From Podarcis muralis (lineage: Eukaryota), in the NCBI RefSeq assembly GCF_964188315.1, contig NC_135658.1:63426001-63490000 (forward strand): 64,000 nt of DNA, written 5' to 3'. Numbering within the stretch: position 1 is the first letter of the stretch; each line of letters starts with the position of its first letter. A model generated the notes under the pieces. It saw only the letters and a program-made list of their open reading frames with translations, ran no database searches and was not told the DNA's origin. The translations under genes and the position numbers were made by a program. This document shows, piece by piece, positions 8,169-60,288 of the stretch.

Positions 8169-8171
<3 letters not shown>

Positions 8172-8225
<54 letters not shown>

Positions 8226-8226
8226 T
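8172..8226. repeat. Compound (CT)n(GT)n microsatellite
   Basis: Seen directly. Confidence 0.98.

Positions 8227-14901: not shown

Positions 14902-14902
<1 letters not shown>

Positions 14903-14932
<30 letters not shown>
14903..14932. repeat. (CA)n microsatellite
   Basis: Seen directly. Confidence 0.98.
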
Positions 14933-14935
<3 letters not shown>

Positions 14936-22656: not shown

Positions 22657-22701
<45 letters not shown>

Positions 22702-22702
22702 T
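22321..22702 (+). mobile_element. L2-type 3' end interrupted by a SINE
   Basis: tttagaagacatctgaaggcagccctg...gctgg [SINE] accagatgggtgg + (ATT)n; matches L2 tails at 4397, 27978 and 50820. Confidence 0.8.
22404..22640 (-). mobile_element. tRNA-derived SINE (Squam3-like), head slightly truncated
   Basis: Nearly identical to 47310-47564; (TTC)n tail; lacks the first approx. 15 bp of the head. Confidence 0.85.
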
Positions 22703-39600: not shown

Positions 39601-41773
39601 CAATCCAGTAAGAAATGTGAAATAAAATTAATGAAAAAGAAGAAGGGGGGGGGGACTGTACAAAAAGCAATTCTGTGAACACAGCTATTACTTCATAAGG
39701 TAAGATTCATTCTCAAGGGACTACAGAGTGAATTAGATGTTACCACAAAAATGACAAATGTTATGAATATCAGATGAAGCCATATTTCATGGAGACTAGC
39801 CATCACAGTGATTGGTCTGTCACATAAGTAACAAATGGTAATAAAATTGAGGCAAAAAACAAAAGTTTAGCGGCTCCCCCATAATGTCCTTAATTTATAA
39901 GTCAATTTTGCATAAGTGAAAATTGAACCAAATAATTAAAGAAAAAACCAAAGCCCTGTGATACAGTCAAACAAGCAACTACTAATAGAAAAAATTATAG
40001 GTGGTTTACATATTAAGTCCATATTCAACCAGGCGGCCAAGTGGAGACTTGAACCCTGGTCTCCCAGGTCCTAATGCAATGCTCCAACCACTATACCACA
40101 GTGATAGAAACCAGGAGCAGCCAATGGGAACAGCTGCACCACAGACTTGGCGTCCCTGCAATGACATCACTACCATGCAATGAGATGGTACAGGGCAGGT
40201 AGGTTTGGATGTACCTGAACCACCCTGACTTCACCCAGACCACTTTAACCCCCAGCTTGTCCTAGTAAAGGGCAGCAGTGCTGCTGCCAGGCCAGGCCTG
40301 TGGTCCCTCCTGATGGGAAATGGCAGCTCACATTATGATGCATCTCAAAAGTGAAATGCCATCTTGGGTCACCTGTGACTGCATGCCATCTGAGAAGTGG
40401 AAAGCAATTGGGGCAGGGTACTGGGATGCAGTTGGTGGGTCCTTCAGCCATCTTGAGTTAGCATTCAAAATCCTGGGTAAGCACACAAAAAATTAAACTT
40501 TCTACCAGACTGCTAGAAAAATCTAGCTAGGCCCCTTTCATTCACCAGAACTTCAAAAATAGCTGCCATGTACTACCTTCACTTAGCTGTCACAAACAGT
40601 TATTGAATTGAGCCAAAAAAGCCCATTTATAATTCATCAATTAAAAATAGTGATTCTTGTACAGATTTTGTCTTTTAACATATCACAAAATCCTGACATT
40701 TTTGCTGAAAGTCTGTCACAGGGAGTAATTTGTTTCTAATGATCTGACTTATTATAAAAAACAAATGAAATGAAATTCAGTTTATTTGTCATGCACATAA
40801 CACACTAGAATGACTAACATTTTGTGCTGTCTTTTAGAATAATGTTTTTCATCTTCAGTGGGATCTATTATATTGTACCTAATAAAGAAAAGTGAGAAAT
40901 ATTAAGTCAGAGAATCTATACATATATTTAAAAGCAAACCTATTCTAATTTCATGAGCTGATCTCACAGTTTTTGCTGGCTTTAATAGGGTCTACACGGA
41001 TGTTACAAAGCGATGCCTCTCAAAGTATGAGGCAAGCTTCTCCAAAGAGACACAAGTAGCTAGCTGTTAGGGAGATATAAAAGGAAATGGCAAACTAATT
41101 TTCAAATTGGAAAACTGCTATATTTCATCTGTATGAAGTATATGGAGCCCTGGCAGATAAAAGTGTGTGTGTGACTGCTCAGTTCTAAGAATTCTGCTTA
41201 TGTTGCACATACCGTTCATATTTGCTCCGTAGGTGGCAATAAATTCTGACTCAAGTCTTTTATAAAACATGTTAGTGGAATGTGCTTCGAAAACACAGAG
41301 ATTGAGCAATGCCTAGAATGAAGACACAAGACGTATATTTGATTCCAAAGCTCACAACCTTATTAATTACTCCACAGAGGATCTGTAGTGATCAATTCAA
41401 ACTCAACATGACTACCTGCAGACAACTTACTATACACCTGAGGAGATACAGGGGAAATCCCCGTATCTCCTCAAGTGAGCAATGCCACCCTGGTTGAAGT
41501 TGCCACACCTGTATCATGCCTGAGGTGGGTCTCACACTGCCATCGTGTCCTAAAGGTGAGCAGAGGGGGCTACTGTAAATCATCTCCACCCTATTGGTCA
41601 GCATCCAAGACCCAAGAGCACGATGTGAAGTTGGTTGCTCATGGGCACTTTACCACAAGGTGTCTCCAAGTGCTCATCAGATCTATGGTGTCATCTGCCC
41701 TGAGTTGTGACAATAAAGCAAATTGGCCAAATTAAAATCACCCAGACTGAAATAACAGGAGTATGGACTAGAC

Positions 41774-41959
41774 CAGGGGTAGCCACCCTTTTAATACCTA
41801 CCTCCCACTAATGCATCTTTCTTGATGGTAAAAATTCCTTACTGCCCACCAGTGCTCGATGGAAGAAGCATTCAGCTTCTACTGTAGAACCCCCTACTGC
41901 CCACCTAGAATCCTGAAACACTCACTAGTGGGCGGTAGAGACCAGGTTGTCAACCCCTG
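41774..41959. mobile_element. hAT (Charlie-like) MITE
   Basis: CAGGGGT...ACCCCTG termini; 8-bp TSD GACTAGAC/GTCTAGAC, matching the NTCTAGAN target preference of Charlie elements. Confidence 0.85.
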
Positions 41960-42128
41960 GTCTAGACAAAATAGGATGACCCAAAACCAATTGTGGGACA
42001 CCTATTCACCTGCTCCACCTAAAATGGGCAACCAGTTAATTCCATATTATAAATGGGAGAGGCCTTCCACGCTGAAATAAAGAGACCAACTTAAAGAGGG
42101 CTGTGTAGGCCCCCAATCTGATTAAATA

Positions 42129-42389
42129 CGGTCATACCTTGGGTTACAGATGCTTCAGGTTGCGTTTCTTCGGGTTATGGACGTGCTGAAACCCAGAAGT
42201 ACCGGAACGGGTTACTTCCAGGTTTCGGCAGTCATGAATGCACAGAAGCACTAAATCACACTTTGTGCATGCGCAGAAGCACCAAATCGCAACCCATGCG
42301 TGTGCAGATGCAACGCTGCAGGTTGCGAAAGCTGCAGGTTGCGAATGTGCCTCCCGCACGGATCACATTCACAACCCGAGCGTCCACTG
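42129..42389. mobile_element. Tc1/mariner (pogo/Tigger-like) MITE
   Basis: TA on both flanks; imperfect TIRs related to 49506-49745; internal gcttcaggttg / ctgcaggttgcgaa subrepeats. Confidence 0.7.
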
Positions 42390-43410
42390 TAATCCCCCAC
42401 AACAATTCAAAATACAATTTAGAGAGATGTAAAATATACAGAGCCACTTTATTTTTTATTTTTAAAAAAAACCCTTAAAATAGCCAGCACATAAGCAACG
42501 ATCAGCCAGGCATAATGTTAGACACACTAGAAGCAAAATAAAAATAGCAGCACTATTTTCATAAGTGCTTTATGTAGTCCTACCAAATATAACTATATAA
42601 AAATGATTTGCTAAATCAATGATTTGTACATCTACCAAATACCATCCATAAAATTATGCAGGATATAAGCAGCTGGTAAAAATGTATGGCAGGAACAGAA
42701 TGATAAGCTGGCCTAGGAGTTCATGATAAATTTGCTGTTTTATATATAGCACAGTAACCGTCCTCTTTATCTCCACAGTGAACAAAGACATATGTAAAAG
42801 TGGCTTCACTGCAGCTACAGTTTACAATTCCATCTTGTTGCTTATTAAACTTACTACCTTAGTGACTGCCTTCTAGGTGACAATGTTTGGGAATTCATAA
42901 CTCTCAGGGGTCACAGAGGGTCTCAAATGGGTTTAAATGTGTAATAACTGAGAAGCAAGTGTTGTGTGTTGCTAAAAGGATGATTATTCCTGGTTGGATG
43001 CAGTATAAAAAGGATGCAGTTTTGTTGGTTGGTAGATTTCCCTACCTGTCCAATGTATGTTTAGTTCCTAATTTTCTTTTTGTTCTGTGAACTGCCCTGA
43101 GACCCTTGGGTATAGGGCGGAATATAATATAATTTAAATAAATAAATAAATAAAATAATGTCAGCGCTACCTATTTGTCTCTGAATTAGATACTGGAGCC
43201 CAATGTCTTGACCCACTGCCATGATGTGTGTTGATTGGCTCACTTACCTGAGTCATGTACACTGAGTCATGTCACTGAGCTATTTCTCAAGGCACCTTGA
43301 TGCAGCTTGGTGCCTGTGGTTGCCACCTTTTGTCTGCCAAGGCTCCTCCACTGATGCATAACAGACAAAGCTTCAAAGGGGCTGAGATGAAACATTAAGA
43401 AACACTTCTC

Positions 43411-43520
43411 TTTATCTCAGAGTCATGGGTTCAAGTCCCACATGGAGCAAAAGATTTCTGCATTGCAGGGGGTTGGATTAGATGACCCTCCTTTCCATCT
43501 CTACAATTCTATGATTCTAT
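43411..43520 (+). mobile_element. Truncated tRNA-head SINE with CR1-derived tail (Squam2-like)
   Basis: B-box-like gggttcaagtccc followed by ctgcattgcagggggttggattagatgaccc...attctatgattcta. Confidence 0.7.
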
Positions 43521-44233
43521 CAGTACCCTTCCCAGTGCTTCAAAAATGGAACAGATTGCTTTGGAAGGTGGCAGACTTCACTTTGATTGGTGCATTAATA
43601 TGAAGCATAAAGATGTTTCTGTTTGCAATGAACTGCTGGTTTTCAATAGCTGGGCAATGGTTACTATTTGCTTCTGCCTTGCTGAAAGCTATGCTCCTTT
43701 ATCACCTAATAGATGGCTATATTTCTCTGGGATATTTTCTACAAAGCTGTGAATATTAGCTTCTTCAACTTGTCCCCTCAGAACCTCCTTTGCCCCCTTT
43801 CCTTGATCCAAATATGGGTGTTTTTTCTGGTGCTGCCACTGATGACACATTGTATTAACAACCCTCAAATTGCAGAAAATTTCTAATGTCCTCTTTACAC
43901 CATCACAGTAAGCCATATTCTAAAATAAAATATTGTTTATTGTGAATGAACAACATGCTGGAACAAGCTGCTGAATTGTGCCTGCTTTGCGCCTCCCCTT
44001 CCTAAGCCAGAAAACAGACCACGGAGAGGCTGTCTTAGTGTGACATGTGAACCAGCACTTGTGGTTTGTTTTTGGAATCAGTTCATGGTTTATTTAGAAA
44101 GTAACAAACCAGAAGTGCTGATTCACACAAGTGCTGACTAGTGTCAAGCCAGCAGCTCTGCGGTTTGTTGCCTATCATATGAGGAGGGGTGCAAAGCAGA
44201 AGTAATTGACCACAGGAAAATATAGTCTTACTG

Positions 44234-44444
44234 TAGGGTTGCCAGATTTGAGCTTTTTTAAAGGAAACCACCAAAATTGTTGAGCTTCTTTTTAGGAAAC
44301 CCCCAAAATTGTTGCACCAAAAAAACCCTGACTTGCCTAAGATCCAGGACAAAGTGCCACTTTTCAGAAATTCACCCCAGACATCAATTCCACCTTTTAA
44401 ATCCTAGTAATATCTGGAAAAAAATCAGACATATTGCAGCCCTA
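44234..44444. mobile_element. Non-autonomous DNA transposon (hAT-like MITE), 7-bp TSD
   Basis: TAGGGTTGCCAGAT left end, decayed ATATTGCAGCCCTA right end; CTTACTG at 44227-44233 and 44445-44451. Confidence 0.75.
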
Positions 44445-45984
44445 CTTACTGTGACATGTAACATGAGCGTCTTCATCCCCATCATTCAGCCCGGACACTG
44501 AGGGCCAGGTTTCAAAATCCTTCTGGCCTTCAGTTCCTTTTACCTGAGTGATCTGTTACTCTAATGCAAACTTTGTATCAGTTACTACTCTAGCAACTGG
44601 GTAGAATCTCCACATGTATACTGCACCCAGAAACTGGATTAAGGCAGGCATCCTACTAGCTTCCACTGGGCCTGCCCAGACACAGACTCTCCACACAGTT
44701 CCTCACTCACTTTGCAAGGCCTATAATTATATTCATGGTTTCCAGGTTCTATCCTCCTATGAACATTAGGAATCTCATCTTTTTTCATGAAATCCATAGC
44801 ATTTATTGACAGCTGAGGAGTCAGGAAAGTGACAGGTTCCCAAGGTTGGGATTTTCAAAAGGCTTCCTTTCCCTCAGCTTTCATGGTATTTTAATTTTTC
44901 ATGGCTATTGAGTAGTAAGTGCTTTGTTGGTTAGGTATGTTTGCTCTCCGCTTATACAAAAGGAAAATATCAACACCAGAGTCTGTCACAATGTGTAGAT
45001 TAGAACATTGTACTTTCCACCCTTCCCCAGTGGAGCTGTAAGCTCATCTGTAATTCACTATGCGGATCCTACTTAATGTCTAGCTTGTTTACTTTCCCGA
45101 TATCTTCCCCCACATGAATTGCTTTGCTTTATTCTAAGCTGAATATCATTTTATTCTTGCCTTCAACAAAACTCCAGTTTGTAGCTCCCCTGTTTCTTTC
45201 TAGAGTATGCTTTCTTGATTTATTCACATGTGTGGATTTGACAAATGTTATTCACATTCTGAGAATCACTGAGCTGCTGGTAAAGTCTTTGGAAAGATAC
45301 AAGAGATACAAAATGGATAATGTGGCATCTTTTACTTGGATGTAAGGCTACATAAGCTTGGAGGCTACTCCTGCAGGAAGAGAGGGAAAGGAAGGGAAAA
45401 TTCCAGCTATATAAAACATGGGTAGAAAGTAAAAATACTAATGGAATTTTACATTGCTGACCTAATCACCAGTGCTGTGACTCTTCAACGTGAACTAAAA
45501 ATACTACAAGAATTTTTTCTGCCATCATTAGGCTTGTTACAGTAATCCTCATTCTTATTCAAGCTGCGCTCATAAAGACAGCAAGATTTGTACCCCAATC
45601 TGTTTCCGAAAGCATGTTGTTCAATCAATGAGCCAAGCAATAATGTCTTGGTAAATACAGTACATATAACAAAATTCTAATGACTTCAGACCCTGTACAC
45701 ATAGATATAGACTTGGCTCTAGACTTAAGTCATGATTATGTTAATGATGACTAACAAGTCTCATTCATTTCAGTGGGTGTATTCCAAGCATGACTGAGTC
45801 TGGCTCCAAACTATAGATGTTTATATCCTGTCCTACTCTGCATGTTCCAGACAGGTTATAACGCACATGCTCAGTGTGTTTAGACTTTATGAATAGCAGC
45901 ATGGGTAAGGCTTGCCTTTATAATCATGCTTTTCTTGCATGCACTGAGACTACACACATTTTTAACATAAGTACAGAACTAATT

Positions 45985-46340
45985 GGACGCGGGTGGCGCT
46001 GTGGGTTAAACCACAGAGCCTAGGACTTGCCGATCAGAAGGTTGGCGGTTTGAATCCCCACAATGGGGTGAGCTCCCGTTGCACGGTCCCTGCTCCTGCC
46101 AACCTAGCAGTTCGAAAGCATGTCCAAGTGCAAGTAGATAAATAGGTACCGCTCCAGCGGGAAGGTAAACGGCGTTTCCGTGCACTGCTCTGGTTCGCCA
46201 GAAGCGGCTTAGTCATGCTGGCCACGTGACCCGGAAGCTGTACGCCGGCTCCCTCGGCCAGTAAAGCGAGATGAGCACCGCAACCCCAGAGTCGGTCACG
46301 ACTGGACCTAATGGTCAGGGGTCCCTTTACCTTTACCTTT
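45985..46340 (+). mobile_element. Full-length Sauria SINE
   Basis: tRNA-like head (ggtggcgctgtgggttaaa...ggtttgaatccc), body, Bov-B-like 3' end, (ACCTTT)n tail; TSD TACAGAAC(T/C)AAT at 45972-45983 and 46342-46353. Confidence 0.92.
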
Positions 46341-47129
46341 TTACAGAACCAATGTAAAAAGAGAACCAGTAAATAGAGAATAAGTAAACTGTTCAGTTTT
46401 CATATTATAACAAAATAGAACACATCTATACAGACATGAAGGAATAACCCACTTCCCTCCACTCATGAAAATAAGATTCAAAGGGTAAGTAAATATACCC
46501 CACAGCGGTTGGTCGTGTGAATCTGTGGATGCATATAGAATCATTTTCAGATACTGTACATGGGTTATAACCCAACACATTTCCATGGAGTCATTTTTCC
46601 TTTGCATTTTCCCTTTCCATTTAGTGCTTTGAGTTGTCTGGTTAGCTTTTCCATAACAGCCCTTGGCCAAACCTTCTGTTTCCAAACAGTCGATTGTAAA
46701 TTATCCAAACCTTTCAAGTTTTGAGCAATCAATTGTTGAGCTGGGATATGATCAATTCTTTGTGGGAAAGGTTCCTGTGTGCATCCTTGAAGATCATTAA
46801 TGAAGCCAGTGTGGAATACATTTACAGTCTGTTTTGTGATCAGACATATTTCCTGAAATACTGCTGCCTACATATGTTTTCATGTATTCAAATGAACACA
46901 CTGCAATGCAGAATCAATCCAGAATGAGCTTTTATTTTCCGGATGAAACTAAAAACTCAAAAAGTGCATTTCAGAAGCAAAAAATAAATAAATGCAAATC
47001 TAGATTGTGTGTGGACTAAGTAGAAAAAGCAAGTACTCAGTCACCATTGATTTTATAATAACATGTGTGCATGTAGCTTTTACCTCAGATAATCATGACA
47101 CATTAGGAAAAACTTTCTCATACTAAAAG

Positions 47130-47695
47130 CTGTTTGACCACCTTGGAAGGTGGTGGAATCTCCTTCATTGGAGATTTTAAAGCAGAGGTTGGGTGACCAT
47201 CTGTTAGGAATTGTTTAGTTGTGATTTCTGCATTGCAGGGGGGTGAACTAGATTACCCTTCACCAAAGGCAGATTTAGGAGAGCTCAGCTGGTTCGCCTA
47301 CACTTAGAAGAAGAAGAAGAAGAAGAGTTTGGATTTGATATCCTGCCTTTCACTCCCTTTTAAGGAGTCTCAAAGCGGCTAACATTCTCCTTTCCCTTCC
47401 TCCCCCACAACAAACACTCTGTGAGGTGAGTGGGGCTGAGAGACTTCAACGAAGTGTGACTGGCCCAAGGTCACCCAGCAGCTGCATGTGGAGGAGCAGA
47501 GACGCGAACCCGGTTCCCCAGATTACGAGACTACCGCTCTTAACCACTACACCATACTGGCTTCCTTAGAAAGGAAGGAGAGTGGCAGGGCGCACCAAAT
47601 GTTGGTGTTGCACAGGGCGCCACTGAAATTTGAAAGTCCGAAGTCTGCCACTGCCTTAGGGTCCATTCCAGCTCTACAATTCTATGATTCTATTA
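47130..47695 (+). mobile_element. CR1 3' end split by a nested MITE that itself holds a SINE
   Basis: CR1 3' UTR stops at ...gattaccctt (47260) and resumes at agggtcc...attctatgattcta (47657-47695). Confidence 0.75.
47310..47564 (-). mobile_element. Full-length tRNA-derived SINE (Squam3-like)
   Basis: Minus-strand head gccagtatggtgtagtggttaagagcgg (A-box) and gggttcgcgtct (B-box-like); (TTC)n tail; TSD CTTAGAA at 47303-47309 and 47565-47571. Confidence 0.9.
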
Positions 47696-47927
47696 TTCAA
47701 AGAGTGCCAGATGCCTAATACCTAACATAGTTTCAGGGTTTCTTCTTCCTCTGTTCTTTTTTCCCATCTACTGTTACAAATACCTATACCTATATCTATA
47801 TATCTCCTACACTTCAGACATTTTTATGCCACTTTCTTGGCAGGACTTCTTGATATAATGTGAACCATGAGTTAAATTACACAGTGCTTGGTCTCATGTC
47901 TTGAGGAGCACATGCCCCATGTCTGGG

Positions 47928-48345
47928 TGTTGTAAGATGCACTGGGTACCACAGCAACAGAGCAGAGGTTGAGTGTATGCTGAGTCATTCACCCTCCCAT
48001 TGGTTCAGGAATGTAGAGATGGGTACGTGTCCTGTCCTGTCCTGTTTGCTGTCAGGGTCTGACTCTGAATCTGTGAGAGTCAGCGGAAGGGGCTGTGGGT
48101 TTTAGACAGCAGTGTTAGCTGGCATGGTGATAGTGTCGGTGGATCTGTACATATGTATGTTTGCTTCAGGGACCAGAAGACCTGTATATAGACTTGTAAT
48201 GGCATAAGGCAGGATCAGTATAGTAAATGTGGTGGGGCATAAGGGGCCTGGGCGAAGGATTAACTATGGCATGTCCTAAGCTCAGGTTGGGGCCTCTGCC
48301 TGGATGGTATCTCTCACCCTGGTCACCCTGGCCTGCATCACAACA
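47928..48345 (-). mobile_element. Probable solo LTR
   Basis: Termini TGTTGT(AA)GATGCA inverted at both ends; TATATA on the minus strand near 48187; no clean TSD, so uncertain. Confidence 0.5.
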
Positions 48346-49505
48346 GGGATCAGTGCTGAACAGCTCCCAAGGAGGGGGCTGTGGTGTTTCCCAATACAGC
48401 AAAGAGCCATTCCACCAGCAAGGGCTGGGTGGAATGATAAACGGATCCTTTTCCTACTGCTGTGCCAACCCCACCTGCCTCTAAGATTTGGCCTGTTTTC
48501 CATCCAACACCTGTTGTTCTGTGTCAGTTATTCCACCACTCATATGCCACTCTTTCCCTGGGCAAAGGGATTTCATGGCTAGCCCCTATTTTTATATTTG
48601 GGAAACTCCTAAAAATCTACCTCCAAAGTTGACATTTTCTTCCATTAGGTTTCTAGGCAAGGTGGGATTTTCTGGGAAGTTTCAATGAGATTCCTGTTGC
48701 CATTTAAACATTTCTCCAGTATGACATAAATAAATTTCTTCAGCATTTGAGAAAGAAGTGTCAGGGTTGCATTTTTCATCTGGATAGCTATTGAGAAAAC
48801 CTTGAGGCACTGATATCTCAAATGTAGCATGGAAACAATTCAGAGGAAGCAGATGCTCACTGCCTACAATTGAATATTGACATGCCTGATTTGTGTGCTC
48901 ATCGGAAGGAAGATCAAGCTCCAAATGTATATTGGTTATACACCAGTTTAACTGCCATGGCTTCCCAAAAAGAATCCTGCTAATTGTAATTTGAGGAAAA
49001 GGCTGAGACCTTTTTGTTGGTGATCCAACATTCCCTGGGGACAAAGTGTGACTTTTAAGCCACTTGGGCTGCATTGAACTCAACAGGACTTACTTCTGAG
49101 TAGACAGATACAGGAATGTGTACTGTCACAGTGCAATGCAATCCAGAAGTAAGCTTCATTTAGTTCAAAGAGACTTATTCCCAGGTAAGTATATATGGGA
49201 CTTGTAGCCATAAATAGTGCCATAGTTGCATTGCTGCTTAAATCCTTCTCCTGCTTCTCATAAAATGTAAGGTTCTTGTATACTAATAAAATGCACTGGT
49301 GTTTCTGCCAACCTCTTTACATAATTGGAAAGAGGAAAGTGTTATTATATTGGGACATGAGTTCACCTTCCTTAGTAATTGTAGCTCAACTACAGACCCA
49401 TGTTCCTTGTAACATTTTCCTTTCGTTTAAAGTTAAATCCTGGGATAACTGGTTGCACTCCCTTTCTTTTAAAAATTACCTTTCAGTCTGGCAAACAAAG
49501 GAATA

Positions 49506-49745
49506 CAGTGGTACCTCGGGTTACATACGCTTCAGGTTACATATGCTTCAGGTTACATACTCTGCTAACCCAGAAACCTCGGGTTAAGAACTTTGCTTCA
49601 GGATGAGAACAGAAATCGTGCAGTGGCGGTGGTGTGGCAGCAGCGGGAGGCCCCATTAGCTAAAGTGGTGCTTCAGGTTAAGAACAGTTTCAGGTTAAGA
49701 ACAGACCTCCGGAATGAATTACATACTTAACCCAAGGTACCACTG
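49506..49745. mobile_element. Tc1/mariner (pogo/Tigger-like) MITE, complete
   Basis: TIRs CAGTGGTACCTCGGGTTA / TAACCCAAGGTACCACTG; TA TSD at 49504-49505 and 49746-49747. Confidence 0.92.
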
Positions 49746-50819
49746 TACTGCCTAAAAAGGGATCATGTGCCAGGTCAAACTTTCAACTCCCCAAGCTTGC
49801 AGCCATGTAAAATAATGGTGGGAATGCCCTTTGGCATGCAAATTTTGGACTAATGTTTTTGAAAGAAATATCAAACAAATTTAAACAACCCATTCAAGCT
49901 ACCCCAAAGTAACTTCTGGTGTGGATGCTGGATGCAGTGAGAGGTTCTTTGACCCAGAAACAGAAGACACTGCAGGATTCAAACCTATCATATCTGGACT
50001 CTGTCTACTGCAAAGAAAACAACTTATAAATTATGTGTTTCTAAGAGTAAAAAAAGACACAGAACATTTCTGTGCTATTTGGTGGGATTTCAGTTCTTAC
50101 AAAACTCTTTTCCTGTCATAAATTGTGAAATTTGTCTTCCTGATGTCTTTTGCTACTTTTATTTTCCTACGTTATCTGCTGTCTCTTCATTTGGAAAATA
50201 TATATATAACCTTTATACTGCTCCTGTGTTTTGTTACTTTGATTATGTTTTCTTTTTTTTTTTTTTTGCTTGTCTGTACTTATGATTTTATATTAATACA
50301 AAATGCAATTAAAAATGCAAATAATACTGTAATAATGGGGTATGGCTTTTTCACTTGTAAGACTGTCAAAATCCCAGAAGGATAAATAAAAGACGATCCT
50401 GCTGTTCCATTTGCTAAAAGCACATACTGTCACTTTTATCTCATGTATTTCTTGTGTTCTTGCTGCATCGTTTGAGTTTATTAAATATCCTAGGGATAAT
50501 ACTCTTAGTACAGCTGTTACCAAGAACTAAAGAGAGATTTAACCAAAACAAAAACTAAGGGGAGAGATTATAAAAAAAACTGCTAGGCTTGTAACTTAGA
50601 AGTCAATAGATGAGGCCACAGCTTCCTCTATAAAAATAGCAGGGCTGCATAGCTTGAACATAACTGGTCTGAAGCATGGTCAAAAAAGTGCCCCATTTCC
50701 CTCAGTACATTCCATGCATATAATGAGGCCATTTTCCAACAATGGGAAAATATGGAACAGCCTGTGGTTTTGTGAATCTCTCATTTCATCTTTGCCTGTT
50801 CCATGCCCTGCAGATCTTT

Positions 50820-51287
50820 TTCTGGTGACTGGGAGAGGCCGCCTAGACCACATAACACCAGTCTTGAAAGACCTACATTGGCTCCCAGTATGTTTCCGGG
50901 CACAATTCAAAGTGTTGGTGCTGACCTTTAAAGCTCTAAATGGCCTTGGTCCAGTAAACCTGTAGGAGCATCTCCACCCTCATTGCTCAGCCTGGATACT
51001 GAGGTCCAGCTCCAAGGGCCTTCTGGTGGTTCCCTCACTGCAAGAAGCCAAGTTACAGGGAACCAGGCAGAGGGCCTTCTCGGTAGTAGCGCACGCCCTG
51101 TGGAACGCCCTCCCGCCAGATGTCAAAGAGATAAACAACTATCTGACGTTTAGAAGACATATGAAGGCAGTCCTGTTTAGGGAAGTTTTTAATGACTGAT
51201 GTTTTGATGTATTTTTAATCTCATGTTGGAAGCCGCCCAGAGTGGCTGGGGAAACCCAGTAAGATGGGTGGGGTATAAGTAATAAAT
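50820..51287 (+). mobile_element. 5'-truncated L2-type LINE (ORF C-terminus + 3' UTR)
   Basis: Encodes LDHITPVLKDLHWLPVCFRAQFKVLVLTFKALNGLGP, homologous to the C-terminus of the 10346-13330 ORF but a different subfamily. Confidence 0.9.
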
Positions 51288-51845
51288 TTCCACCTGACTT
51301 GGTGGGGTGGGGCCCTAACTGACTCCAGCTACGAAAGCTTAAGACTGCTGAAGAGGCCAGAAATTATCTTGGCTGTTTCTTAGCGCAAACCCAGGTCATC
51401 AAGCCTGAGTACCTCCAGCCATCACCCACCATGAACCACCATTGGCAGGATTGGCAGCAATAGCAGCAGATAAGCTCTATACTTTTACATGTGCATTTTA
51501 TATATTTAACTTCCTTTAGTAATATTTTATTTTGCAATGTCTAAGGAAAAAGTATTTTGTTAACTTTGTTTATGACAAGTAATCATAAACATGAAATACA
51601 ACATTAAAAATACACAACCAATTTTCACATCATTCTCAACAAGATCAGGGGTTGGACTAGATGACCCTCGTGGTCCTTTCCAACTTCTATGGTTGCATGA
51701 TAATAAAGATGCAAAAAACCAAACAGCCACAAAACAACCCAAATGACACCTCAACACAAAATTGTTGGTTCAGTGCTATTCTGTATTGTTTCCACATTGT
51801 TTTACGTCTGATAGATTGTGTACACGGCTTCTACATCCTTTATAT

Positions 51846-51913
51846 CAGTGTTTCCCAACCTTTTTTGGGCAAAGGCACACTTGTTTCATGAAAAAAATCT
51901 CGAGGCACACCAC
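51846..51913. mobile_element. hAT-type MITE left end (no right end seen)
   Basis: CAGTGTTTCCCAACC terminal motif typical of hAT MITEs. Confidence 0.6.
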
Positions 51914-52415
51914 AGCCCCGTGACATCAGCGCGCAGCGTCACGCCGGGAGGGACGCACGAAAGTGTAAGTTTCAATTCCCCCCCCCTTGCCTTCCTTCTG
52001 TGCCAACCGCCAAAAAGCCAAGAATCGCGGGACCGCCGGCGGAGGGGGGGAGGGCGAGCGGAGGCAGCGGCGAGCCCCGTTCCTCCCCATCCGCCCCATC
52101 CCGTGCAAGGAGCGCGAACAGGTATGAGAAGGGGGTCAAACCTGCGGGCCGGCGCCGGGGAACCTCCAAGCTTTGGGGGTGGGGGGGGAGGAGGCAGCAA
52201 AGCGAGGCAGGAAGGAGAGCGCGGCTTGGCTGGGTGAGCTTTGGCAGGGGCAGGGAATGAGAGCTGCGAGGCGGGCGCTGCGGACGGAGGCGCTGCCCGC
52301 CGAGCTCGCAGGCAGCCAGGCAGGCAGACGGCGAGAGCCCCGTGCTGGGCGGCCTCTCCTGGGAAGTTTCAAAGCTGTAGTTAACTTTTTTAGATTATTA
52401 TAAAAAAAAATGAAT

Positions 52416-52526
52416 GCTGGAGCACGATTTCTGTTCTCATTCTGAAGCAAAGTTCTTAACCCAATGTAATATTTCTGGGTTAGTGGAGTCTGTAACCTGA
52501 AGCCTCAGTTACCCGAGGTACGACTG
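52416..52526 (-). mobile_element. Half of a Tc1/mariner MITE
   Basis: Reverse complement aligns to the first approx. 115 bp of 49506-49745, then breaks off. Confidence 0.85.
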
Positions 52527-53205
52527 TCCCATGTAATGTAGTTTTGTGTTTTTGTGTTGTGAGCCTTGGATGTTAAACAGCCACCACCACCGCAGGCCCT
52601 TAAAAACAAGGTACTTTCATATTCATCTTTACTTGGAGGCAAGCCTCCCTCTTCCCAAGGGGGCCACTTCCCAATTCAGAGTGCTTGGCATCCTAAGGAG
52701 GGGAGCAGCGCTGGATTTGGGACGCTGCTGGTGGCAGAGGGGCGCAAATAACAACACTGAACAGATCCGTTGGAAAAAGCAGCTGTACCAAAATGAATTA
52801 TTGCGAAAATGAGGGATATTTGAGGGAGGGGCCGTCAAATGTTGTCCTCGCCCAGGACGCCACTTGAAGGAAGCAGCGGGGGCGGACGCGGGTTGGAATC
52901 CTCTCAGCCCGGCCTCCCTCACAGGGTTGTTGTGGGGGGTAAATGGCGGGGAGCCCCCCCGCCCCCCCCCCACCGAAACTCCTGGGAGGGAGAAAACGGA
53001 ATCCGAAAGCACTAATAATAAAAGCCAATTTATATATGTGGAGAGAGGGAGGGAACCCTGAGGCCGCGTCAGGCCCACAAAGGCGGGAAGGGGCCCCTCA
53101 GCCGCGCAGGAGGCGTCTGTCCCGCAAGAGGCCGGCAAAGGTCACCTCTGATGCCCTTGCGCCTCCCTCCCTCCATTGCGCGTGCAGCGGGGGGGCGTCG
53201 CTCAC

Positions 53206-53319
53206 CATCCTCTGTGGCTGTGCGTGGCGGCTGCAGGTCGGCTGGCCCCTCTAGCGCGCGTGGACGGCGACGCCCCTGGCGCAACTCAGGCGCTGGAGGG
53301 AGCGGAGTGAGCGGTACAT
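53206..53319 (-). CDS. FH: Fumarate hydratase exon 1 coding part (mitochondrial presequence) with in-frame TAG; may be an orphan or pseudogenised copy
   Basis: Translation MYRSLRSLQRLSCARGVAVHAR*RGQPTCSRHAQPQRM; Kozak CCGCCATG; ends in ...R-M then a GTGAGC donor (53205-53200). Vertebrate FH begins MYR(A/S)xR(L/S)L and its exon 1 ends on the second Met in phase 0. TAG at 53253-53251. Confidence 0.78.
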
Positions 53320-53400
53320 GGCGGAGGCTGAGGAGCGAGGCGCCGCGGGCGGGCGAGGGGGAGGAGGACGGAGTGGGCGGAGTCGCAGCCAATGGGGTGG
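53315..53400 (-). promoter_or_regulatory. TATA-less housekeeping promoter motifs
   Basis: GC boxes GGGCGG at 53347-53352 and 53375-53380, CCAAT at 53389-53393, YY1-like ACATGGCGG overlapping the start codon. Confidence 0.6.
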
Positions 53401-53505
53401 AAGAAACCCACGTTTCCTTTTTGAAAGAGAAACTTTTAAACGAGCGCGTGGTTGAAGAAGGCGCTTGCCCAGCTCCCCTCTGCGCCTCGGAGGGCGGGTT
53501 TGAGC

Positions 53506-53680
53506 ACGGCATTTCCATGCGCTGCTCTGGTTCGCCAGAAGCGGCTTAGTCATGCTGGCCACATGACCCAGAAGCTGTACACCGGCTCCCTCGGCCAATA
53601 AAGCAAGATGAGCACCGCAACCCCAGAGTCAGTCACGACTGGACCTAATAGTCAGGGGTCCCTTTACCCTTTACCTTTAC
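53506..53680 (+). mobile_element. 5'-truncated Sauria SINE at the upstream edge of the CpG island
   Basis: Aligns to the 3' half of 45985-46340 including the (ACCTTT)n-like tail; no TSD. Confidence 0.92.
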
Positions 53681-54966
53681 TGTTTTGTTTTGTGTTCTGA
53701 CTATTTATTTGTATTTTTATCTTGCGAACCACCTTGAGATCTTGAAAGGCAGCTTATAAATTTAATAATAAACAAACAACATTCCAGTTGCAGCCTTTCC
53801 TCTTTGGAACAGTTGGCTTGTGGTGAGAAAGTCTGAAGAACAGGACTTCTGAAGAAGTTTCTCATGGAGAAAATTTTGACTTGTACATATCTTTGAAGTG
53901 AACCAATTGGTCTTTGACTGACTCTAATATGCCTTTTATCACTAGAAGCCTGGCAGTCTCGTTGGCAGTGATTCACTTTATTGTTAATCCCAAGGGTTCC
54001 TCCAGTAAGTGAACACCTTGGATTTGACCTTTTGTTTCTTGCACTGTACTTATTGCAGCTAAGCTCTAATTACAGCACTTTTCCCTTTTAGAATGTAATC
54101 TCAGGTAATAGCATCTCTTGAAGTTCTTGGCTCTTGGCTCTGAGTCAAGATATTTGACAGCTAAGCTCCCAGTAAATTTCAGCCAGAAATAAGAAAAGTA
54201 TCCATTTTTGACAATAGCACTATTCAGTCACAGCTACAACTGACAAATTTGGTGCTAACAAGTTTGTTTTGAAGCATCTACAGATATCGTTGTTTCTTGG
54301 AGCTATTGAATATTATGTGTATGTCTGGGGAAATACTCCAGAAGAAAAACTAAGAAATTTATACCATGTTTCACTAGATCTATTATATTTATTCCTTATA
54401 TCTCAACTCTTGCCAAACTCAATAATAGTGATATGGGGCTAAATTAGCATTTCACTAAAAGGGTTAATCACTTCTCTTCTGGAAGCAGCTGTGCAGTTCC
54501 CAGCTGGTTTGCTTAGGTCCCTCAGTCATGAATTCCCTGGGAAGAGGATTGGTTATAAACCACTCTGGGAACTGTGGCTCTATGAGGGAACATGGGGTGT
54601 CACTTCAACTCTCAGCACCCCTAAGAAATGAAAGTTCCCAGGATTCTTTGGGTGAAGCAATGACTGTTGGTATAATGGTGCTTTAAATGTATAGTGTGGA
54701 TGTAGCTAAAGTTTATTGCACATTTGTGCCAACTTCCAAAGAGGCCTTTGTAACAGGCTTCCATGAAACATGATTTACAATATCTGGGGTCAAATGCCCT
54801 GATCTCACAAGATAAGTGAACTGGGAATATTCCTCTTCTGGTTATTTTGCTTTTAATGAGCAATCACCTTAGCTTAATCGACTCACTTAAAAGTCCAGGA
54901 GGAAAATAATGCACACACCCACACACCCAAAAAAATATCCCTGCCATTTACAGTAATCGGGTTGTT

Positions 54967-55013
54967 CCTTTCCCTTTCCCTTTCCCTTTCCCTTTCCCTT
55001 TCCCTTTCCTTTC
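54967..55013. repeat. (CTTTCC)n hexanucleotide repeat
   Basis: Seen directly. Confidence 0.95.
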
Positions 55014-56757
55014 TTCTGCTGTTTCTCCATTCCAAAGGAGCACACTTTTAGCATCCCATTTGTCCTATTCAGCCTAGCTAATAGACTTCATCTGTTGGGA
55101 CTAATTAACACACAGAATGACATTAAAATACAGTAAAGCTCAGTGACAATGTTACACAATAAAACACCATAACAATGGCAATACTGCAGCATAGACAAAC
55201 AGTAAACCTTGCATTCACACTGCATTTTCCCAGTAAGCGCAGTATCAGTATCCCTACAGGATCCATGTGGTAGAGCTTCTTCTAGAGAAGAAACCGCAAA
55301 CTGCAGTGAAACTAGAGCCACCATTAAATCTCTCAGTGCTCTCTAGAAAGTTATATTTTAAGGCATATTTGTAGGTTCCTGCTTGGGCAAAATATCTGAG
55401 GAATTCAAAGGAAGACCAGGGACTTTCAATAAGGCTGTCAAAAGTATTTGGAGTGGTTTTGCTGGAGACAAACAGTCAGGTTTTGCATTGATAGCAGTGA
55501 CCAGAGGAGAGCAGAGAGAAGAAACGCCATGGTGCATCTGCAGCAGCACAACTTGACACCTTCATCTGACCCAGCTGCAACAAAGCATGTCTCTCCCATC
55601 TCTACATCTACAGCAGGCACTGTAATCTTCCAACACTTTGGCTTCACCCCCAAAGCTACATTCCTTCATTGTCTCCCAAGACAGACAGATGCCAACAACA
55701 ACTGGTTTTGCATAGCTGGAGTTTACCAGTGAATTTTACCTGAGGCAAATTTGCATTAGAATGGCAATAAACACTAAATTTGTCTCAACAGTTACACCTT
55801 TTGTTGTTTGGTCTACACAACCTCTTGTGTTAAAATCTATTCTTATTCCTTATTTTTATTCATCCAGGTCTTTAATGAAAGCGGACATATTATAAAGGGT
55901 GATACCCAATGAAAGATATGCACATATTACTTAGTCTGCATCCAGTGTGTTCCAACTGCTAGTTGGCATTTACATGTTAGCCACAACCCATATTGATCCT
56001 CTAGTTTCAGTAAAAATACTGCTGTTTTTCCTCAAACCAGTTTCAATCCAACTACGAAACCTCGGCTGCATGCACTTTGTACTTATGAAAGGTCTGTACA
56101 GTTGAGACAGCCATCACACATCCACAGATGAGCAGACATGCAAATATAACGGCTTTGTGAACAGGATTTGGCAGGGGGGGCGAGTGGAGCAGGAAAAGGG
56201 AAACTGAAAGGGTTGTGCATGTCAGTTGAGGGAATCCGTACCCCTTCTTTAAGGGGTACAGCACTATGAAAATGTAGCTTGAAGCACAGCAGAAGTAATG
56301 ACCTCCCTGAGTTTCAAGACACTAATGTGAACATATCCTAAGTTATATACAGAGTAGACCCAGTGAAGTTAATGTACGTCAAAGGATAGGAGAGTAATTG
56401 TGAACTTGTGCAAGAGTTGCTAACTTGTGCCTGATTTGAAGAGGAAGGCTTCAGGTATATGCTCTGTGGAAAATATTTGGATTAATCACGGTACACTTTC
56501 ATTACTGTTATGACTCACCCCAGCCTGGCATCACCAGTTCCAGGATATTTGTGATCAACAAAAAAGGGAGAGGCAGATTAACGTCTACCTTGGCATGTAG
56601 CAGACTGGAGAGTGAGGGCATGTTTGTTTGTATTTGTCAATATTTGTGACATTAAGTAGATTTATAACACCAATTTATACCATTTCATTTGGTGTCATTT
56701 GGATATCCAGATCCCTGTTCATTTGCATTCATCTCCCATAAAACATATCCACCAACT

Positions 56758-58270
56758 TGTTGTTGTTGTTTAGTCGTTTAGTCGTGTCCGACTCTTCGTG
56801 ACCCCATGGACCAGAGCACGCCAGGCACTCCTGTCTTCCACTGCCTCCCGCAGTTTGGTCAGGCTCATGTTTGTAGCTTCGAGAACACTATCCAACCATC
56901 TCATCCTCTGTCGTCCCCTTCTCCTAGTGCCCTCCATCTTTCCCAACATCAGGGTCTTTTCCAGGGAGTCTTCTCTTCTCATGAGGTGGCCAAAGTATTG
57001 GAGCCTCAACTTCACGATCTGTCCTTCCAGTGAGCACTCAGGTCTGATTTCCTTAAGAATGGATGCGTTTGATCTTCTTGCAGTCCATGGGACTCTCAAC
57101 AGTCTCCTCCAGCACCATAATTCAAAAGCATCAATTCTTCGGCGATCAGCCTTCTTTATGGTCCAGCTCTCACTTCCATACATCACTACTGGGAAAACCA
57201 TGGCTTTAACTATACGGACCTTTGTTGGTAAGGTGATGTCTCTACTTTTTAAGATGTTGTCTAGATTTGCCATCGCCTTTCTCCCAAGGAGCAGGCGTCT
57301 TTTAATTTCGTGACTGCTGTCACCATCTGCAGTGATCATGGAGCCCAAGAAAATAAAATCTCTCACTGCCTCCATTTCTTCCCCTTCTATTTGCCAGGAG
57401 GTGATGGGACCAGTGGCCATGATCTTCGTTTTTTTGATGTTGAGCTTCAGACCATATTTTGCGCTCTCCTCTTTCACCCTCATTAAAAGGTTCTTTAATT
57501 CCTCCTCACTTTCTGCCATCAAGGTTGTGTCATCTGCATATCTGAGGTTGTTGATATTTCTTCCGGCGATCTTAATTCCGGCTTGGGATTCATCCAGCCC
57601 AGCCTTTCGCATGATGAATTCTGCATATAAGTTAAATAAGCAGGGGGACAATATACAGCCTTGTCGTACTCCTTTCCCAATTTTGAACCAATCAGTTGTT
57701 CCATATCCAGTTCTAACTGTAGCTTCTTGTCCCACATAGAGATTTCTCAGGAGACAGATGAGGTGATCAGGCACTCCCATTTCTTTAAGAACTTGCCATA
57801 GTTTGCTGTGGTCGACACAGTCAAAGGCTTTTGCATAGTCAATGAAGCAGAAGTAGATGTCTTTCTGGAACTCTCTAGCTTTCTCCATAATCCAGCGCAT
57901 GTTTGCAATTTGGTCTCTGGTTCCTCTGCCTCTTCTAAATCCAGCTTGCACTTCTGGGAGTTCTCGGTCCACATACTGCTTAAGCCTGCCTTGTAGAATT
58001 TTAAGCATAACCTTGCTAGCGTGTGAAATAAGTGCAATTGTGCGGTAGTTGGAGCATTCTTTGGCACTTCCCTTCTTTGGGATTGGGATGTAGACTGATC
58101 TTCTCCAATCTTCTGGCCACTGCTGAGTTTTCCAAATTTGCTGGCATATTGAGTGTAGCACCTTAACAGCATCATCTTTTAAAATTTTAAATAATTCAGC
58201 TGGAATATCATCACTTCCACTGGCCTTGTTATTAGCGATGCTTTCTAAGGCCCATTTGACTTCACTTTCA
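56758..58270 (-). mobile_element. 5'-truncated Bov-B (RTE) LINE
   Basis: (CAA)n tail at 56758-56771; 11-bp TSD ATCCACCAACT at 56747-56757 and 58275-58285. Confidence 0.95.
56770..58266 (-). CDS. Bov-B reverse transcriptase (partial, open frame with no start codon)
   Basis: The frame stays open upstream of the track ORF (SEVKWALESIANNKASGSDDIPAELF...); RT motifs NYRTIALISH, QAGFR, FIDYAKAFD, GVRQGCILSP.LF, YADD, LNIKKTK; ends KSRTRLND*. Confidence 0.93.
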   Translation of the reverse strand, partial: SEVKWALESIANNKASGSDDIPAELFKILKDDAVKVLHSICQQIWKTQQWPEDWRRSVYIPIPKKGSAKECSNYRTIALISHASKVMLKILQGRLKQYVDRELPEVQAGFRRGRGTRDQIANMRWIMEKAREFQKDIYFCFIDYAKAFDCVDHSKLWQVLKEMGVPDHLICLLRNLYVGQEATVRTGYGTTDWFKIGKGVRQGCILSPCLFNLYAEFIMRKAGLDESQAGIKIAGRNINNLRYADDTTLMAESEEELKNLLMRVKEESAKYGLKLNIKKTKIMATGPITSWQIEGEEMEAVRDFIFLGSMITADGDSSHEIKRRLLLGRKAMANLDNILKSRDITLPTKVRIVKAMVFPVVMYGSESWTIKKADRRRIDAFELWCWRRLLRVPWTARRSNASILKEIRPECSLEGQIVKLRLQYFGHLMRREDSLEKTLMLGKMEGTRRRGRQRMRWLDSVLEATNMSLTKLREAVEDRSAWRALVHGVTKSRTRLND

Positions 58271-59345
58271 ACTAATCCACCAACTACTCTTGGCTAAAGG
58301 CTAAATGGAAAAATTAACTTTGAAAACATATTTGAGGGCAGAAAATGAAAAGTCCTTACAGCTGTGGCATGAAATTGAGTTCCAAGAGCAAGGCTGAGGC
58401 TACAATCCAAAGCATGGTTACCAGAGAGTAAACCACACTGGACACAATCAGAATTCCTTCTGAATAAACATGTGCTTAGGAATGCAGCGCAGTGGGTCAG
58501 GGATATGGCCAGGAGTTAAGTATTTGAGCTTGTGTTGTTCTCTTTCACCTATATGAATGCAGTTGTTTCAGGAGATTCTACGAACCTTTTCATTTTTAAG
58601 AGTAACAAGGTATCTGTGTAGTAAAAGGTAAGAAAACCAAGACAGGTTATCTGAAATGTCCTATTCTGCATAATTACTGTGCAAGTAGCAGGCAAAATTG
58701 AAGAAGGAATTAAAATTATGTTCCACTCAACCATGTTCTTCAGTATGAGAGACATTATATCGTGTACTTAAATCCAATAGCTTAATCCAATTAAGACAAC
58801 TGTATAATTTGAATTTAATTATTAGACAAGCTAGATGATGGAAATCATGTATGCATATCAAACATGAAGCTATGCACATTTTACTGTTCTACCTGATGTC
58901 ATTATGTATGTCACTAATTAATGTGTATTCATATATGAGTTTTGTCTAAAGGTCACTTAAATTGTAGGCTGATTACTTTGGCTTTTCCTCAACACACTTT
59001 GAATATTATTTAGCTCCAGTACTGAAAATATGCAGTATTTCCACTGAGTAAGGTTAACCAGCAAGGCTGGATATGAAGCACAATAAGGATTATACACAAA
59101 CAGAACACTTGGCAACACACAACTACATTGTGTGACATTGCGCAAGGTGGGTTACAATGACTGTTTCAATGAAACCTTCTTTTGAAAAGGGAAAGGAAGA
59201 AGGGAAACATGACTGGGAGGGGGAGAGAAAGAGTGAGGAGTGTGAACAAGTTATACATTAAAATTATAAGAGTCCTGTGTTTCAGTTTGGGTTAAAAGTG
59301 GTTTCTGAGTCTCATAAGATTGAATGCACCAATCCGTTGAGTTAT

Positions 59346-59381
<36 letters not shown>

Positions 59382-59384
59382 TGC

Positions 59385-59545
59385 ATTTCTATATGCAGTG
59401 CATAGTCAAAGTTTGGAAATTGCTACCCCAGGAGGCAGTGATGGCCACCAACTTGGATGGCTTTAAAAGAGGATTAGACAAATTCATGGAGGAGAGAGGT
59501 GTCAATGGCTACTAACCAAGATGGCTGTACTCTACCTTCTGTGGA
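59385..59545 (+). mobile_element. Old CR1-type ORF2 C-terminal fragment
   Basis: IVKVWKLLPQEAVMATNLDGFKRGLDKFMEERGVNGY*, a CR1-like terminus. Confidence 0.7.
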
Positions 59546-59689
59546 GATGACATTAGAGAAAGGGAATTGCAGCCTAGAGATGACAAGCAGGGAGGAAGGA
59601 GTAGGAAGTATTCAAACCATAAGTTTCCAGCCATTGTAACTTATCCCAACAATATCAAAATAAGCTCCAATAAACAAGAGGGGAAGACT

Positions 59690-60288
59690 TGAAAACAACA
59701 GAAGCAGACCTCAGAACACTTGAAGCAGCCTTTGGAAGGCACAGCCCATAGAATGATTCCTGCTGCTTCCCAGAGGAGGAGGAGACGAGTGGTGGTGATA
59801 GATGACTCCATGACCTTACTGTGGGTGTCTGCCATAGACTGCCAAACCAGACTGAAGACTTGGATGATGCCTTACCAGAGCAGATTACCAAACATTCAAA
59901 AGGGAAAGAAACAGTAATCATGGGGGGGGGGCTGCAATTTCCCCAATATCTGTTGAGACTCAAACTCTGCCAAGCGTGTGAGATCTGCCAAATTCTTCCA
60001 TTGCCTCGCTGACAATTTCATTCCCCAGAAGATGGAAGAACCAACAAAGGGATCATCTGTCTGGGACCTGGTCCTCACCAATAGGGAGCAACTGATTAAT
60101 GGAGTGAAAGTGTTTGGAAACGTGGGAGGAAGTGATCATATTCTCCTGGGTTTCAAGATACAGAAACCCTCGGAGGTTTTTAAACAGAGGTTGGATGGCC
60201 ATTTGTCATGGATTGCTGCATTGCAGGGGGCTGGAGTAGATGACCCTTGAGGACCCTTCCAAGACAAAGATTCTATGATTCTATGATT
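59690..60288 (+). mobile_element. Internally deleted CR1 (ORF1 piece + endonuclease piece + 3' end)
   Basis: RRRRVVVIDDS (ORF1 esterase motif), VGVCHRLPNQTEDLD and DLVLTN...GGSDH (APE), then EVFKQRLDGHLS, 3' UTR and ATTCTATG tail; RT absent. 5' boundary approximate. Confidence 0.85.

What the first reader, a model, noticed from the sequence alone, without database searches (positions are those of the whole stretch)
53206..53319. In-frame stop codon inside the FH mitochondrial presequence turns it into a uORF
Seen: ATG (53319) with a strong Kozak, 22 sense codons, TAG (53253-53251), then 14 more in-frame codons to a second ATG (53208-53206) at the splice donor. Established: vertebrate FH makes mitochondrial and cytosolic fumarase from one gene, and the cytosolic form starts at this exon-terminal Met. 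Inference: if the base is real, this copy cannot make the mitochondrial form. It has instead a 22-codon uORF ending 42 nt before the second ATG (A at -3), an arrangement suited to re-initiation or leaky scanning. Options: cytosol-only paralogue, dead duplicate, readthrough, rare allele or consensus error.
Basis: partly seen in the sequence, partly recalled or inferred. Interest (0 to 1): 0.8.

Follow-up and report, generated by a model that had tools for sequence, protein, structure and literature searches.

The report
Dead transposon-borne copy of FH exon 1
The stop codon is in the assembly, but it lies in a decayed, orphan copy of a roughly 20-copy repeat that carries an FH-like promoter and first exon, not in the lizard's working fumarate hydratase gene, so it is ordinary pseudogene-type decay.

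Summary
The letters are as described: on the minus strand, ATG (53319), 22 codons, TAG (53253-53251), 14 codons, then ATG (53208-53206) at a GT donor.

- **No FH body.** The window holds no fumarase exon: motif scans and tblastn with E. coli FumC found nothing, although FumC matches human FH at E=2e-182.
- **Multicopy.** Contigs over 52477-53508 have word depth 232-327 in a DNA run of the same species and 135-152 in a sister species. Flanking unique DNA has 12-14. That gives about 20 and about 10 copies.
- **CAG elsewhere.** Those contigs and all 55 RNA reads over the codon read CAG (Gln), giving an intact 38-codon exon. No read carried the window's letters.
- **Decay.** The window differs from the majority at 15 places; 13 are G/C to A/T and 8 are at CpG.
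- **Transposon setting.** A hAT-like terminal repeat starts at 51846, exactly where unique contigs stop. The other end is missing, and a 5'-truncated SINE abuts it at 53506.

This scan had already found an intact FH-like exon 1 inside a 2-kb hAT transposon elsewhere in this genome (s1-181793). This copy is best read as a truncated, mutated, unexpressed member of that family. Not shown: that the exon derives from FH, and independent reads confirming the T at this locus.

The parts
53206..53319 (-). FH-like first-exon copy of 38 codons, with a private stop (TAG 53253-53251) at codon 23. It has five further private substitutions: 53308, 53270, 53243, 53221 and 53213.
   Evidence: The majority version in the reads is an intact ORF with CAG at codon 23.
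53320..53505 (-). Promoter and 5'UTR part of the copied CpG island, with an inverted CCAAT box (ATTGG) and GC boxes. It is cut off at about 53506-53508.
   Evidence: One search gives the sequence. In one search, RNA contig record 18 fits 53224-53508 and then runs on 68 nt unlike the window. RNA depth here is 16-20, from other copies.
52528..53205 (-). Copied start of intron 1, beginning at the GTGAGC donor. It belongs to the same roughly 20-copy unit.
   Evidence: contigs over 52477-53252 have depth 232-327 (X4), 135-152 (X2) and 53 (X5). RNA read depth is only about 1, which fits an intron.
52419..52527 (.). Very high-copy short repeat inside the unit. All contigs break here.
   Evidence: summed depth is about 2.5 million, with loose ends at 52419/52425 and 52503/52527; a second copy lies at 49532-49621 (83% identity).
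51846..52400 (+). hAT-like terminal arm. The terminal repeat starts CAGTGTTTCCCAACC at 51846 and is followed by a CpG-rich block (GC 0.64).
   Evidence: In one search, unique flank contigs of both DNA runs stop at 51845. Summed depth is about 200,000 over the terminus. Over the block it is 6,000-24,000 in X4 against 144-816 in X2.
53506..53690 (+). 5'-truncated SINE that abuts the cut-off end of the unit. Single-copy DNA starts at about 53710.
   Evidence: 93.6% identity to 46169-46340, part of a longer SINE copy at about 46037-46399. SINE-type loose ends at 53506, and the single-copy contig starts at 53710.

Best explanation
This is not the fumarate hydratase gene. It is one degenerate copy of a dispersed repeat that carries a CpG-island promoter, an FH-like first exon and the start of intron 1. 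The repeat has about 20 copies in this species and about 10 in a sister species.

The carrier is most likely a non-autonomous hAT transposon, the 'Pack-hAT' type this scan has already described elsewhere in this genome. This copy keeps one transposon end, at 51846. It has lost the other end, where a 5'-truncated SINE now abuts it at 53506. It has since drifted by ordinary G/C to A/T decay, and one of those changes turned codon 23 from CAG to TAG.

The '22-codon uORF plus second ATG' therefore has no fumarase ORF behind it and no detectable transcript.

- **Shown:** absence of an FH body, multicopy depth, CAG in all other copies and in RNA, the direction of the substitutions, and the one hAT-like end.
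- **Inferred:** that the exon derives from FH, that hAT transposition spread it, and that the T at this locus is a real base.
For: **No fumarase coding sequence in the window.**
- Twenty-nine class II fumarase motifs gave no fumarase-like match in any of the six frames; the only three were short patterns in unrelated contexts.
- tblastn with E. coli FumC gave no hit at E<=10.
- As a control, FumC matches human mitochondrial FH chains at E=2e-182.

**Multicopy.**
- Single contigs over 52477-53252 have word depth 232-327 in X4 and 135-152 in X2.
- Unique flank contigs over 53710-54668 have 12.4-14.4.

**Sense codon everywhere else.** At 53253 all runs read G on the plus strand: 55 of 55 RNA reads from 31 start sites, plus contigs of X5, X4 and X2. 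The majority exon translates as an intact 38-codon ORF.

**Not expressed.** 0 of 40-55 RNA reads carry the window's letter at any of the six exon differences. RNA coverage is strand-specific and confined to the exon: depth 37 on the exon against about 1 in the intron.

**Decay signature.** 13 of 15 differences are majority G/C to window A/T, and 8 lie at majority CpG sites (binomial p=0.002 for direction).

**Transposon setting.**
- CAGTGTTTCCCAACC starts at 51846, exactly where unique contigs of both DNA runs end.
- In organism B the block 52066-52176 has the same depth (145) as the FH-like part (136-152).
- Earlier finding s1-181793 describes an intact FH-like exon inside a 2-kb hAT element elsewhere in this genome. 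That is a lead, not independent proof.
Against: - Only one terminal repeat is present, with no inverted partner and no target-site duplication in the window. hAT carriage of this particular copy is therefore inferred.
- Contigs break at the 52419-52527 repeat, so no single record physically links the hAT arm to the FH-like part.
- FH origin is not statistically supported. phmmer of the 22-residue piece against PDB gave no hit at E<=10, although PDB holds a 510-residue full-length FH chain. Protein searches found only SINE-derived ORFs.
- Logan contigs drop rare variants, so the window's own letters, including the T of TAG, were never seen in independent data.
- Depth ratios give only a rough copy number.
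Confidence: 0.8

Rival explanations
1. One reading: this is the lizard's FH gene, or a working paralogue. The stop has turned its mitochondrial presequence into a 22-codon uORF, and a cytosol-only fumarase is made from the second ATG by leaky scanning or re-initiation.
For: The codon layout is exactly as described. The second ATG has A at -3. Dual targeting of fumarase from one gene through two in-frame starts or two transcript classes is established in rat and human (PMC6068284, read).
Against: No fumarase exon lies anywhere in the 64-kb window. The segment is about 20-copy. 0 of 55 RNA reads carry the TAG or the other private letters. A transposon end lies 1.36 kb downstream, within what would be intron 1.
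Confidence: 0.02
2. It is a dead orphan duplicate of the FH 5' end, but it was spread by something other than hAT transposition, such as segmental duplication or repair-mediated copying. On this reading the hAT-like end at 51846 is an unrelated neighbouring MITE.
For: Only one terminal repeat and no target-site duplication are present. The terminal 110 nt belong to a family of roughly 10,000-plus copies by depth, so a chance neighbour is possible. No contig links the two parts.
Against: About 20 dispersed, near-identical copies are hard to obtain by segmental duplication. In organism B the depth of 52066-52176 equals that of the FH-like part. At roughly 16,000 copies in a genome of about 1.3-1.5 Gb, a chance MITE end within 1.4 kb has about a 3% expectation (my estimate). 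An intact copy with hAT ends was reported at another locus (s1-181793; not rechecked here).
Confidence: 0.1
3. The TAG and the other private letters are consensus errors made while assembling a multicopy, GC-rich repeat. On this reading the real copy at this locus has CAG.
For: No independent run shows the window's letters. The best DNA holders carry only 0.54-0.57 of the words of 53000-53600.
Against: All 15 differences are substitutions with a strong G/C to A/T and CpG bias, which is the mark of real mutational decay. Long-read errors are mostly insertions and deletions, and short-read polishing pulls a copy towards the family majority, not away from it (both points from general knowledge). 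Contigs drop low-depth variants of a repeat by design, so absence there is expected.
Confidence: 0.08

Closest known systems
Pack-TIR elements of animals: TIR DNA transposons carrying captured host gene fragments (Tan et al. 2021, Nat Commun, PMC8277862). Plant Pack-MULE and Pack-TYPE elements are the better-known counterparts.
   Same: The unit is non-autonomous and its interior is host-like DNA, here a promoter, a first exon and an intron start. It is multicopy, which that paper attributes to transposition after capture. Transcripts of the captured part exist.
   Different: This copy has only one terminal repeat and no detectable target-site duplication, so it is a truncated relic. The copy number, about 20, is high for an animal Pack-TIR. 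The source gene is assigned by resemblance only.
Earlier finding of this scan, s1-181793: a 2-kb hAT transposon in a CARMIL2 intron carrying a CpG-island promoter and an intact FH-like exon 1, in the same genome.
   Same: Same genome, same kind of cargo, and a compatible size: at least 1.73 kb is accounted for here, counting the 68 nt by which the majority copy runs on.
   Different: The copy in this window is broken by a stop at codon 23 and five other exon substitutions, has lost one end, and is not detectably transcribed. The two sequences could not be aligned because that one was not available to me.
Dual-targeted vertebrate fumarase (FH): mitochondrial and cytosolic forms from one gene through two in-frame AUGs in rat or two transcript classes in human (PMC6068284).
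   Same: The exon layout resembles FH exon 1. It has an N-terminal basic, Ser/Arg/Leu-rich presequence beginning MYRxLRxL, and an in-frame Met as the last codon before a phase-0 donor. The human sequence and its exon boundary are from my memory.
   Different: No catalytic exons follow, the locus is not single-copy, and it is not expressed. It cannot work as an FH gene in any form.
Unitary decay of a non-functional gene fragment, of pseudogene type.
   Same: It shows a premature stop, G/C to A/T and CpG-biased substitutions, and no transcripts.
   Different: The fragment was never a whole gene. It is only a promoter plus the first exon.

Membership tests
Functional vertebrate FH gene (class II fumarase locus) | Exons encoding the class II fumarase/lyase fold lie downstream of exon 1 | tested here: not met
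   No fumarase-like motif match in six frames. tblastn with E. coli FumC found nothing at E<=10. As a control, FumC matches human FH at E=2e-182.
Functional vertebrate FH gene (class II fumarase locus) | Exon 1 encodes the FH mitochondrial presequence and ends with the alternative Met | tested here: inconclusive
   The layout fits: MYRSLRSL... and ...RM followed by GT. However, phmmer against PDB gave no hit, although PDB includes a 510-residue FH chain. The resemblance to human MYRALRLL... is from memory.
Functional vertebrate FH gene (class II fumarase locus) | Single-copy locus whose letters match the transcripts | tested here: not met
   Contig depth is 232-327 against 12-14 for unique DNA, and 0 of 55 RNA reads carry the window's letters.
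uORF-controlled mRNA (leaky scanning or re-initiation) | A transcribed short ORF lies upstream of a main protein-coding ORF on the same mRNA | tested here: not met
   No main ORF exists: the second ATG is the last codon before the donor and no fumarase exon is present. No RNA read carried the TAG.
Pack-TIR / Pack-hAT transposon | Terminal inverted repeats at both ends | tested here: not met
   A left end, CAGTGTTTCCCAACC, sits at 51846. No inverted partner was found in 40000-60000. This copy is therefore at best a truncated member.
Pack-TIR / Pack-hAT transposon | 8-bp target-site duplication flanking the element | tested here: inconclusive
   The left flank CTTTATAT (51838-45) has no second copy in 51000-58000. 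That is expected if the right end is lost.
Pack-TIR / Pack-hAT transposon | The interior is captured host gene DNA rather than a transposase gene | tested here: inconclusive
   The interior is a CpG island with a first-exon-like ORF and a splice donor. PDB searches of four reading frames of the 51.8-52.4 kb arm found no transposase; the FH-like part was covered only by the two protein searches, and no Pfam scan was made. The source gene was not proven.
Pack-TIR / Pack-hAT transposon | The loaded unit is present in several dispersed copies | tested here: met
   Depth ratios give about 20 copies in organism A and about 10 in organism B, with the same majority sequence in two DNA runs and two RNA runs. 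That the copies are dispersed is inferred.

The most novel reading that the evidence does not exclude
The intact sister copies, about 20 in this species, each carry an active CpG-island promoter, a mitochondrial-presequence exon and a good splice donor. They could act as scattered 'promoter plus targeting-peptide traps' that splice into exons of the genes they land in. That would occasionally send host proteins to mitochondria or create new transcripts. The copy in this window would then be a dead member showing how such traps are disarmed. The exon-confined, strand-specific RNA coverage does not tell the real FH mRNA apart from such chimeras.
Probability: 0.08. Interest if true: 0.6.

Novelty: new member of a known kind. 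Interest (0 to 1): 0.12.

Why it matters
As stated, a vertebrate FH that had lost its mitochondrial form would have been remarkable. It is not what is here, so the main value is negative: it removes a false lead. It also shows that in this lizard genome a first exon resembling a known gene may be transposon cargo, so the rest of the gene should be checked before a gene is called.

A secondary value is added data on the FH-like loaded transposon family this scan had already met:
- rough copy numbers in two species;
- evidence that the intact version is transcribed;
- an example of a truncated, mutated copy.

Tried and rejected
1. **Right terminal repeat and target-site duplication.** Inverted-repeat search, pattern search and local alignment found none.
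2. **FH identity by sequence.**
   - phmmer of the 22-residue piece against PDB gave no hit.
   - Paper searches for the human presequence string found none.
   - A protein search with the 125-residue stop-free frame returned only SINE-derived ORFs. Restricting it to the non-SINE part gave nothing.
   - Full-length lizard FH proteins were out of reach because of the length filter on candidates.
3. **Is the CpG-rich block 51889-52394 the RANBP9 cargo reported elsewhere in this genome?** PDB searches of four frames gave only chance hits, and no RANBP9-like ORF is visible. Not supported; the source is unknown.
4. **A run holding the TAG-bearing words.** None was listed, but only 2 words were sampled.
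5. **Notes of this scan near this place or by sequence.** All blank.
6. **Rejected: a very long FH intron 1.** It is incompatible with the multicopy depth and with the RNA letters.

Full report
**1. Observation.**
ATG is at 53319-53317 in the context gccgccATGt. Twenty-two sense codons follow, then TAG at 53253-53251, then 14 more in-frame codons. A second ATG is at 53208-53206 (A at -3), directly followed by GTGAGC. The peptide reads MYRSLRSLQRLSCARGVAVHAR, stop, RGQPTCSRHAQPQRM. The stretch lies in a CpG-rich block.

**2. Is it the FH gene?**
- An FH exon 1 on the minus strand at 53.2 kb leaves 53 kb of window downstream.
- Twenty-nine conserved class II fumarase motifs were scanned in all six frames. 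There was no fumarase-like match; the only three matches were short patterns (GRTH, MPGK, FE.NV) in unrelated contexts.
- tblastn with E. coli FumC, taken from an annotated record, found nothing at E<=10.
- As a control for sensitivity, the same protein matches human mitochondrial FH chains at E=2e-182.
- Stop-free frames across the window show LINE and SINE debris and no evident host exon.
- So the second ATG has no fumarase reading frame behind it.

**3. What public reads say.**
I laid one raw RNA run (X23), one RNA contig set (X5), one DNA contig set of the same species (X4) and one of another species (X2) on 51400-54700.
- *The codon.* At 53253 every run reads G on the plus strand, which is CAG (Gln) on the coding strand. 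This holds for 55 of 55 RNA reads from 31 start sites and for the contigs of X5, X4 and X2.
- *Other private letters.* The window differs from this majority at five more exon places (53213, 53221, 53243, 53270, 53308). With the majority letters the exon is an intact 38-codon ORF.
- *Copy number.* The contigs that carry the majority are not single-copy. Over 52477-53252 their word depth is 232-327 in X4 and 135-152 in X2. Unique contigs over 53710-54668 have 12.4 and 14.4. That gives about 20 copies in organism A and about 10 in organism B.
- *Expression.* RNA coverage is confined to the exon and upstream part (depth 37, 20 and 16) and is about 1 in the intron. Over the exon it comes from one read direction only, the one expected for a minus-strand transcript in a standard stranded library. 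No RNA read carries the window's own letters.

**4. Direction of change.**
Of the 15 places in 52540-53507 where the contigs of the runs agree against the window, 13 are majority G/C to window A/T, and 8 lie in majority CpG sites. The window copy is therefore the derived, decaying one. CAG to TAG is one of these transitions.

**5. Setting.**
- Unique flank contigs of both DNA runs stop at 51845.
- At 51846 the sequence begins CAGTGTTTCCCAACC. From my own knowledge this looks like a hAT-Charlie-type terminal repeat, and it has very high depth.
- A CpG-rich block follows (51955-52398). Its depth is far higher in organism A than in organism B. A common derivative lacks 51978-52156.
- Next comes a very abundant short repeat (52419-52527), then the FH-like intron, exon and promoter in antisense.
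- At 53506-53508 the unit is cut off. An RNA contig of the majority runs on 68 nt unlike the window, while the window continues with a 5'-truncated SINE (93.6% identical to 46169-46340). Unique DNA starts at 53710.
- No inverted partner of the terminal repeat and no target-site duplication exist in the window.

**6. Earlier findings of this scan.**
Notes on the same genome, which they name as Podarcis muralis, describe many hAT elements loaded with a promoter and first exon of host genes. One is a 2-kb element with an intact FH-like exon 1 in a CARMIL2 intron (s1-181793). That lead made me test copy number and look for transposon ends, and both tests came out as it predicts. I could not align the two copies.

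**7. Best explanation (0.8).**
This is a right-truncated, mutated, silent copy of that loaded transposon family, and the stop is a private substitution.

Rivals:
- A working FH with a uORF (0.02).
- An orphan duplicate spread by some other mechanism (0.1).
- A consensus error at the private letters (0.08).

The FH origin of the exon is separate from these and remains an inference, at about 0.8. It rests on the MYRxLRxL start and on the terminal Met at a phase-0 donor, as in human FH exon 1 (from memory). Background on dual targeting comes from PMC6068284. Sequence searches could not support the FH origin.

**8. Comparison and novelty.**
Gene-fragment-carrying TIR transposons are known in animals: 370 Pack-TIRs in 100 genomes, with multicopy ones spread by transposition and some transcribed (PMC8277862). 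This is one more, broken, member of a family the scan has already reported. The uORF reading is not a real feature of FH. Interest is low.

Noticed in passing
window 51955-52398: A CpG-rich block next to the hAT-like end has summed contig depth 6,000-24,000 in the DNA run of organism A but only 144-816 in organism B. This suggests a species-specific burst of a short derivative. A form lacking 51978-52156 is abundant in RNA contigs (depth 663), and RNA reads cover both strands. The source of the block is unknown.
   Followed up: partly
window 51656-51845: Single-copy left-flank contigs (639 nt in X2, 329 nt in X4) fit only up to 51845. They then run on for 449 and 150 nt of sequence unlike the window. 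This could be an empty-site allele or a different element at this site in other individuals and species.
   Followed up: no
window 53435 / 51845: A DNA contig (depth 59) joins 53435 to 51845 with AAG between them. In some copies, then, a left transposon end follows the FH-like promoter in the same orientation. That could mean nested or tandem elements.
   Followed up: no
window 10346-13327 (+): An uninterrupted 994-codon ORF has endonuclease and reverse-transcriptase domains (Pfam Exo_endo_phos and RVT_1). It looks like an intact, possibly active LINE ORF2.
   Followed up: partly
window 56773-58293 (-): A 507-codon stop-free reverse-transcriptase frame (RVT_1, E=1.5e-40). By eye it looks like an RTE/BovB-type LINE fragment.
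   Followed up: partly
window 52419-52527 and 49532-49621: A repeat of about 100 nt has enormous summed depth, about 2.5 million in the DNA runs, and thousands of RNA reads. It is one of the most abundant short repeats of this genome.
   Followed up: no
window 4181-4380: A run of 200 N, an assembly gap. It was left untouched.
   Followed up: no
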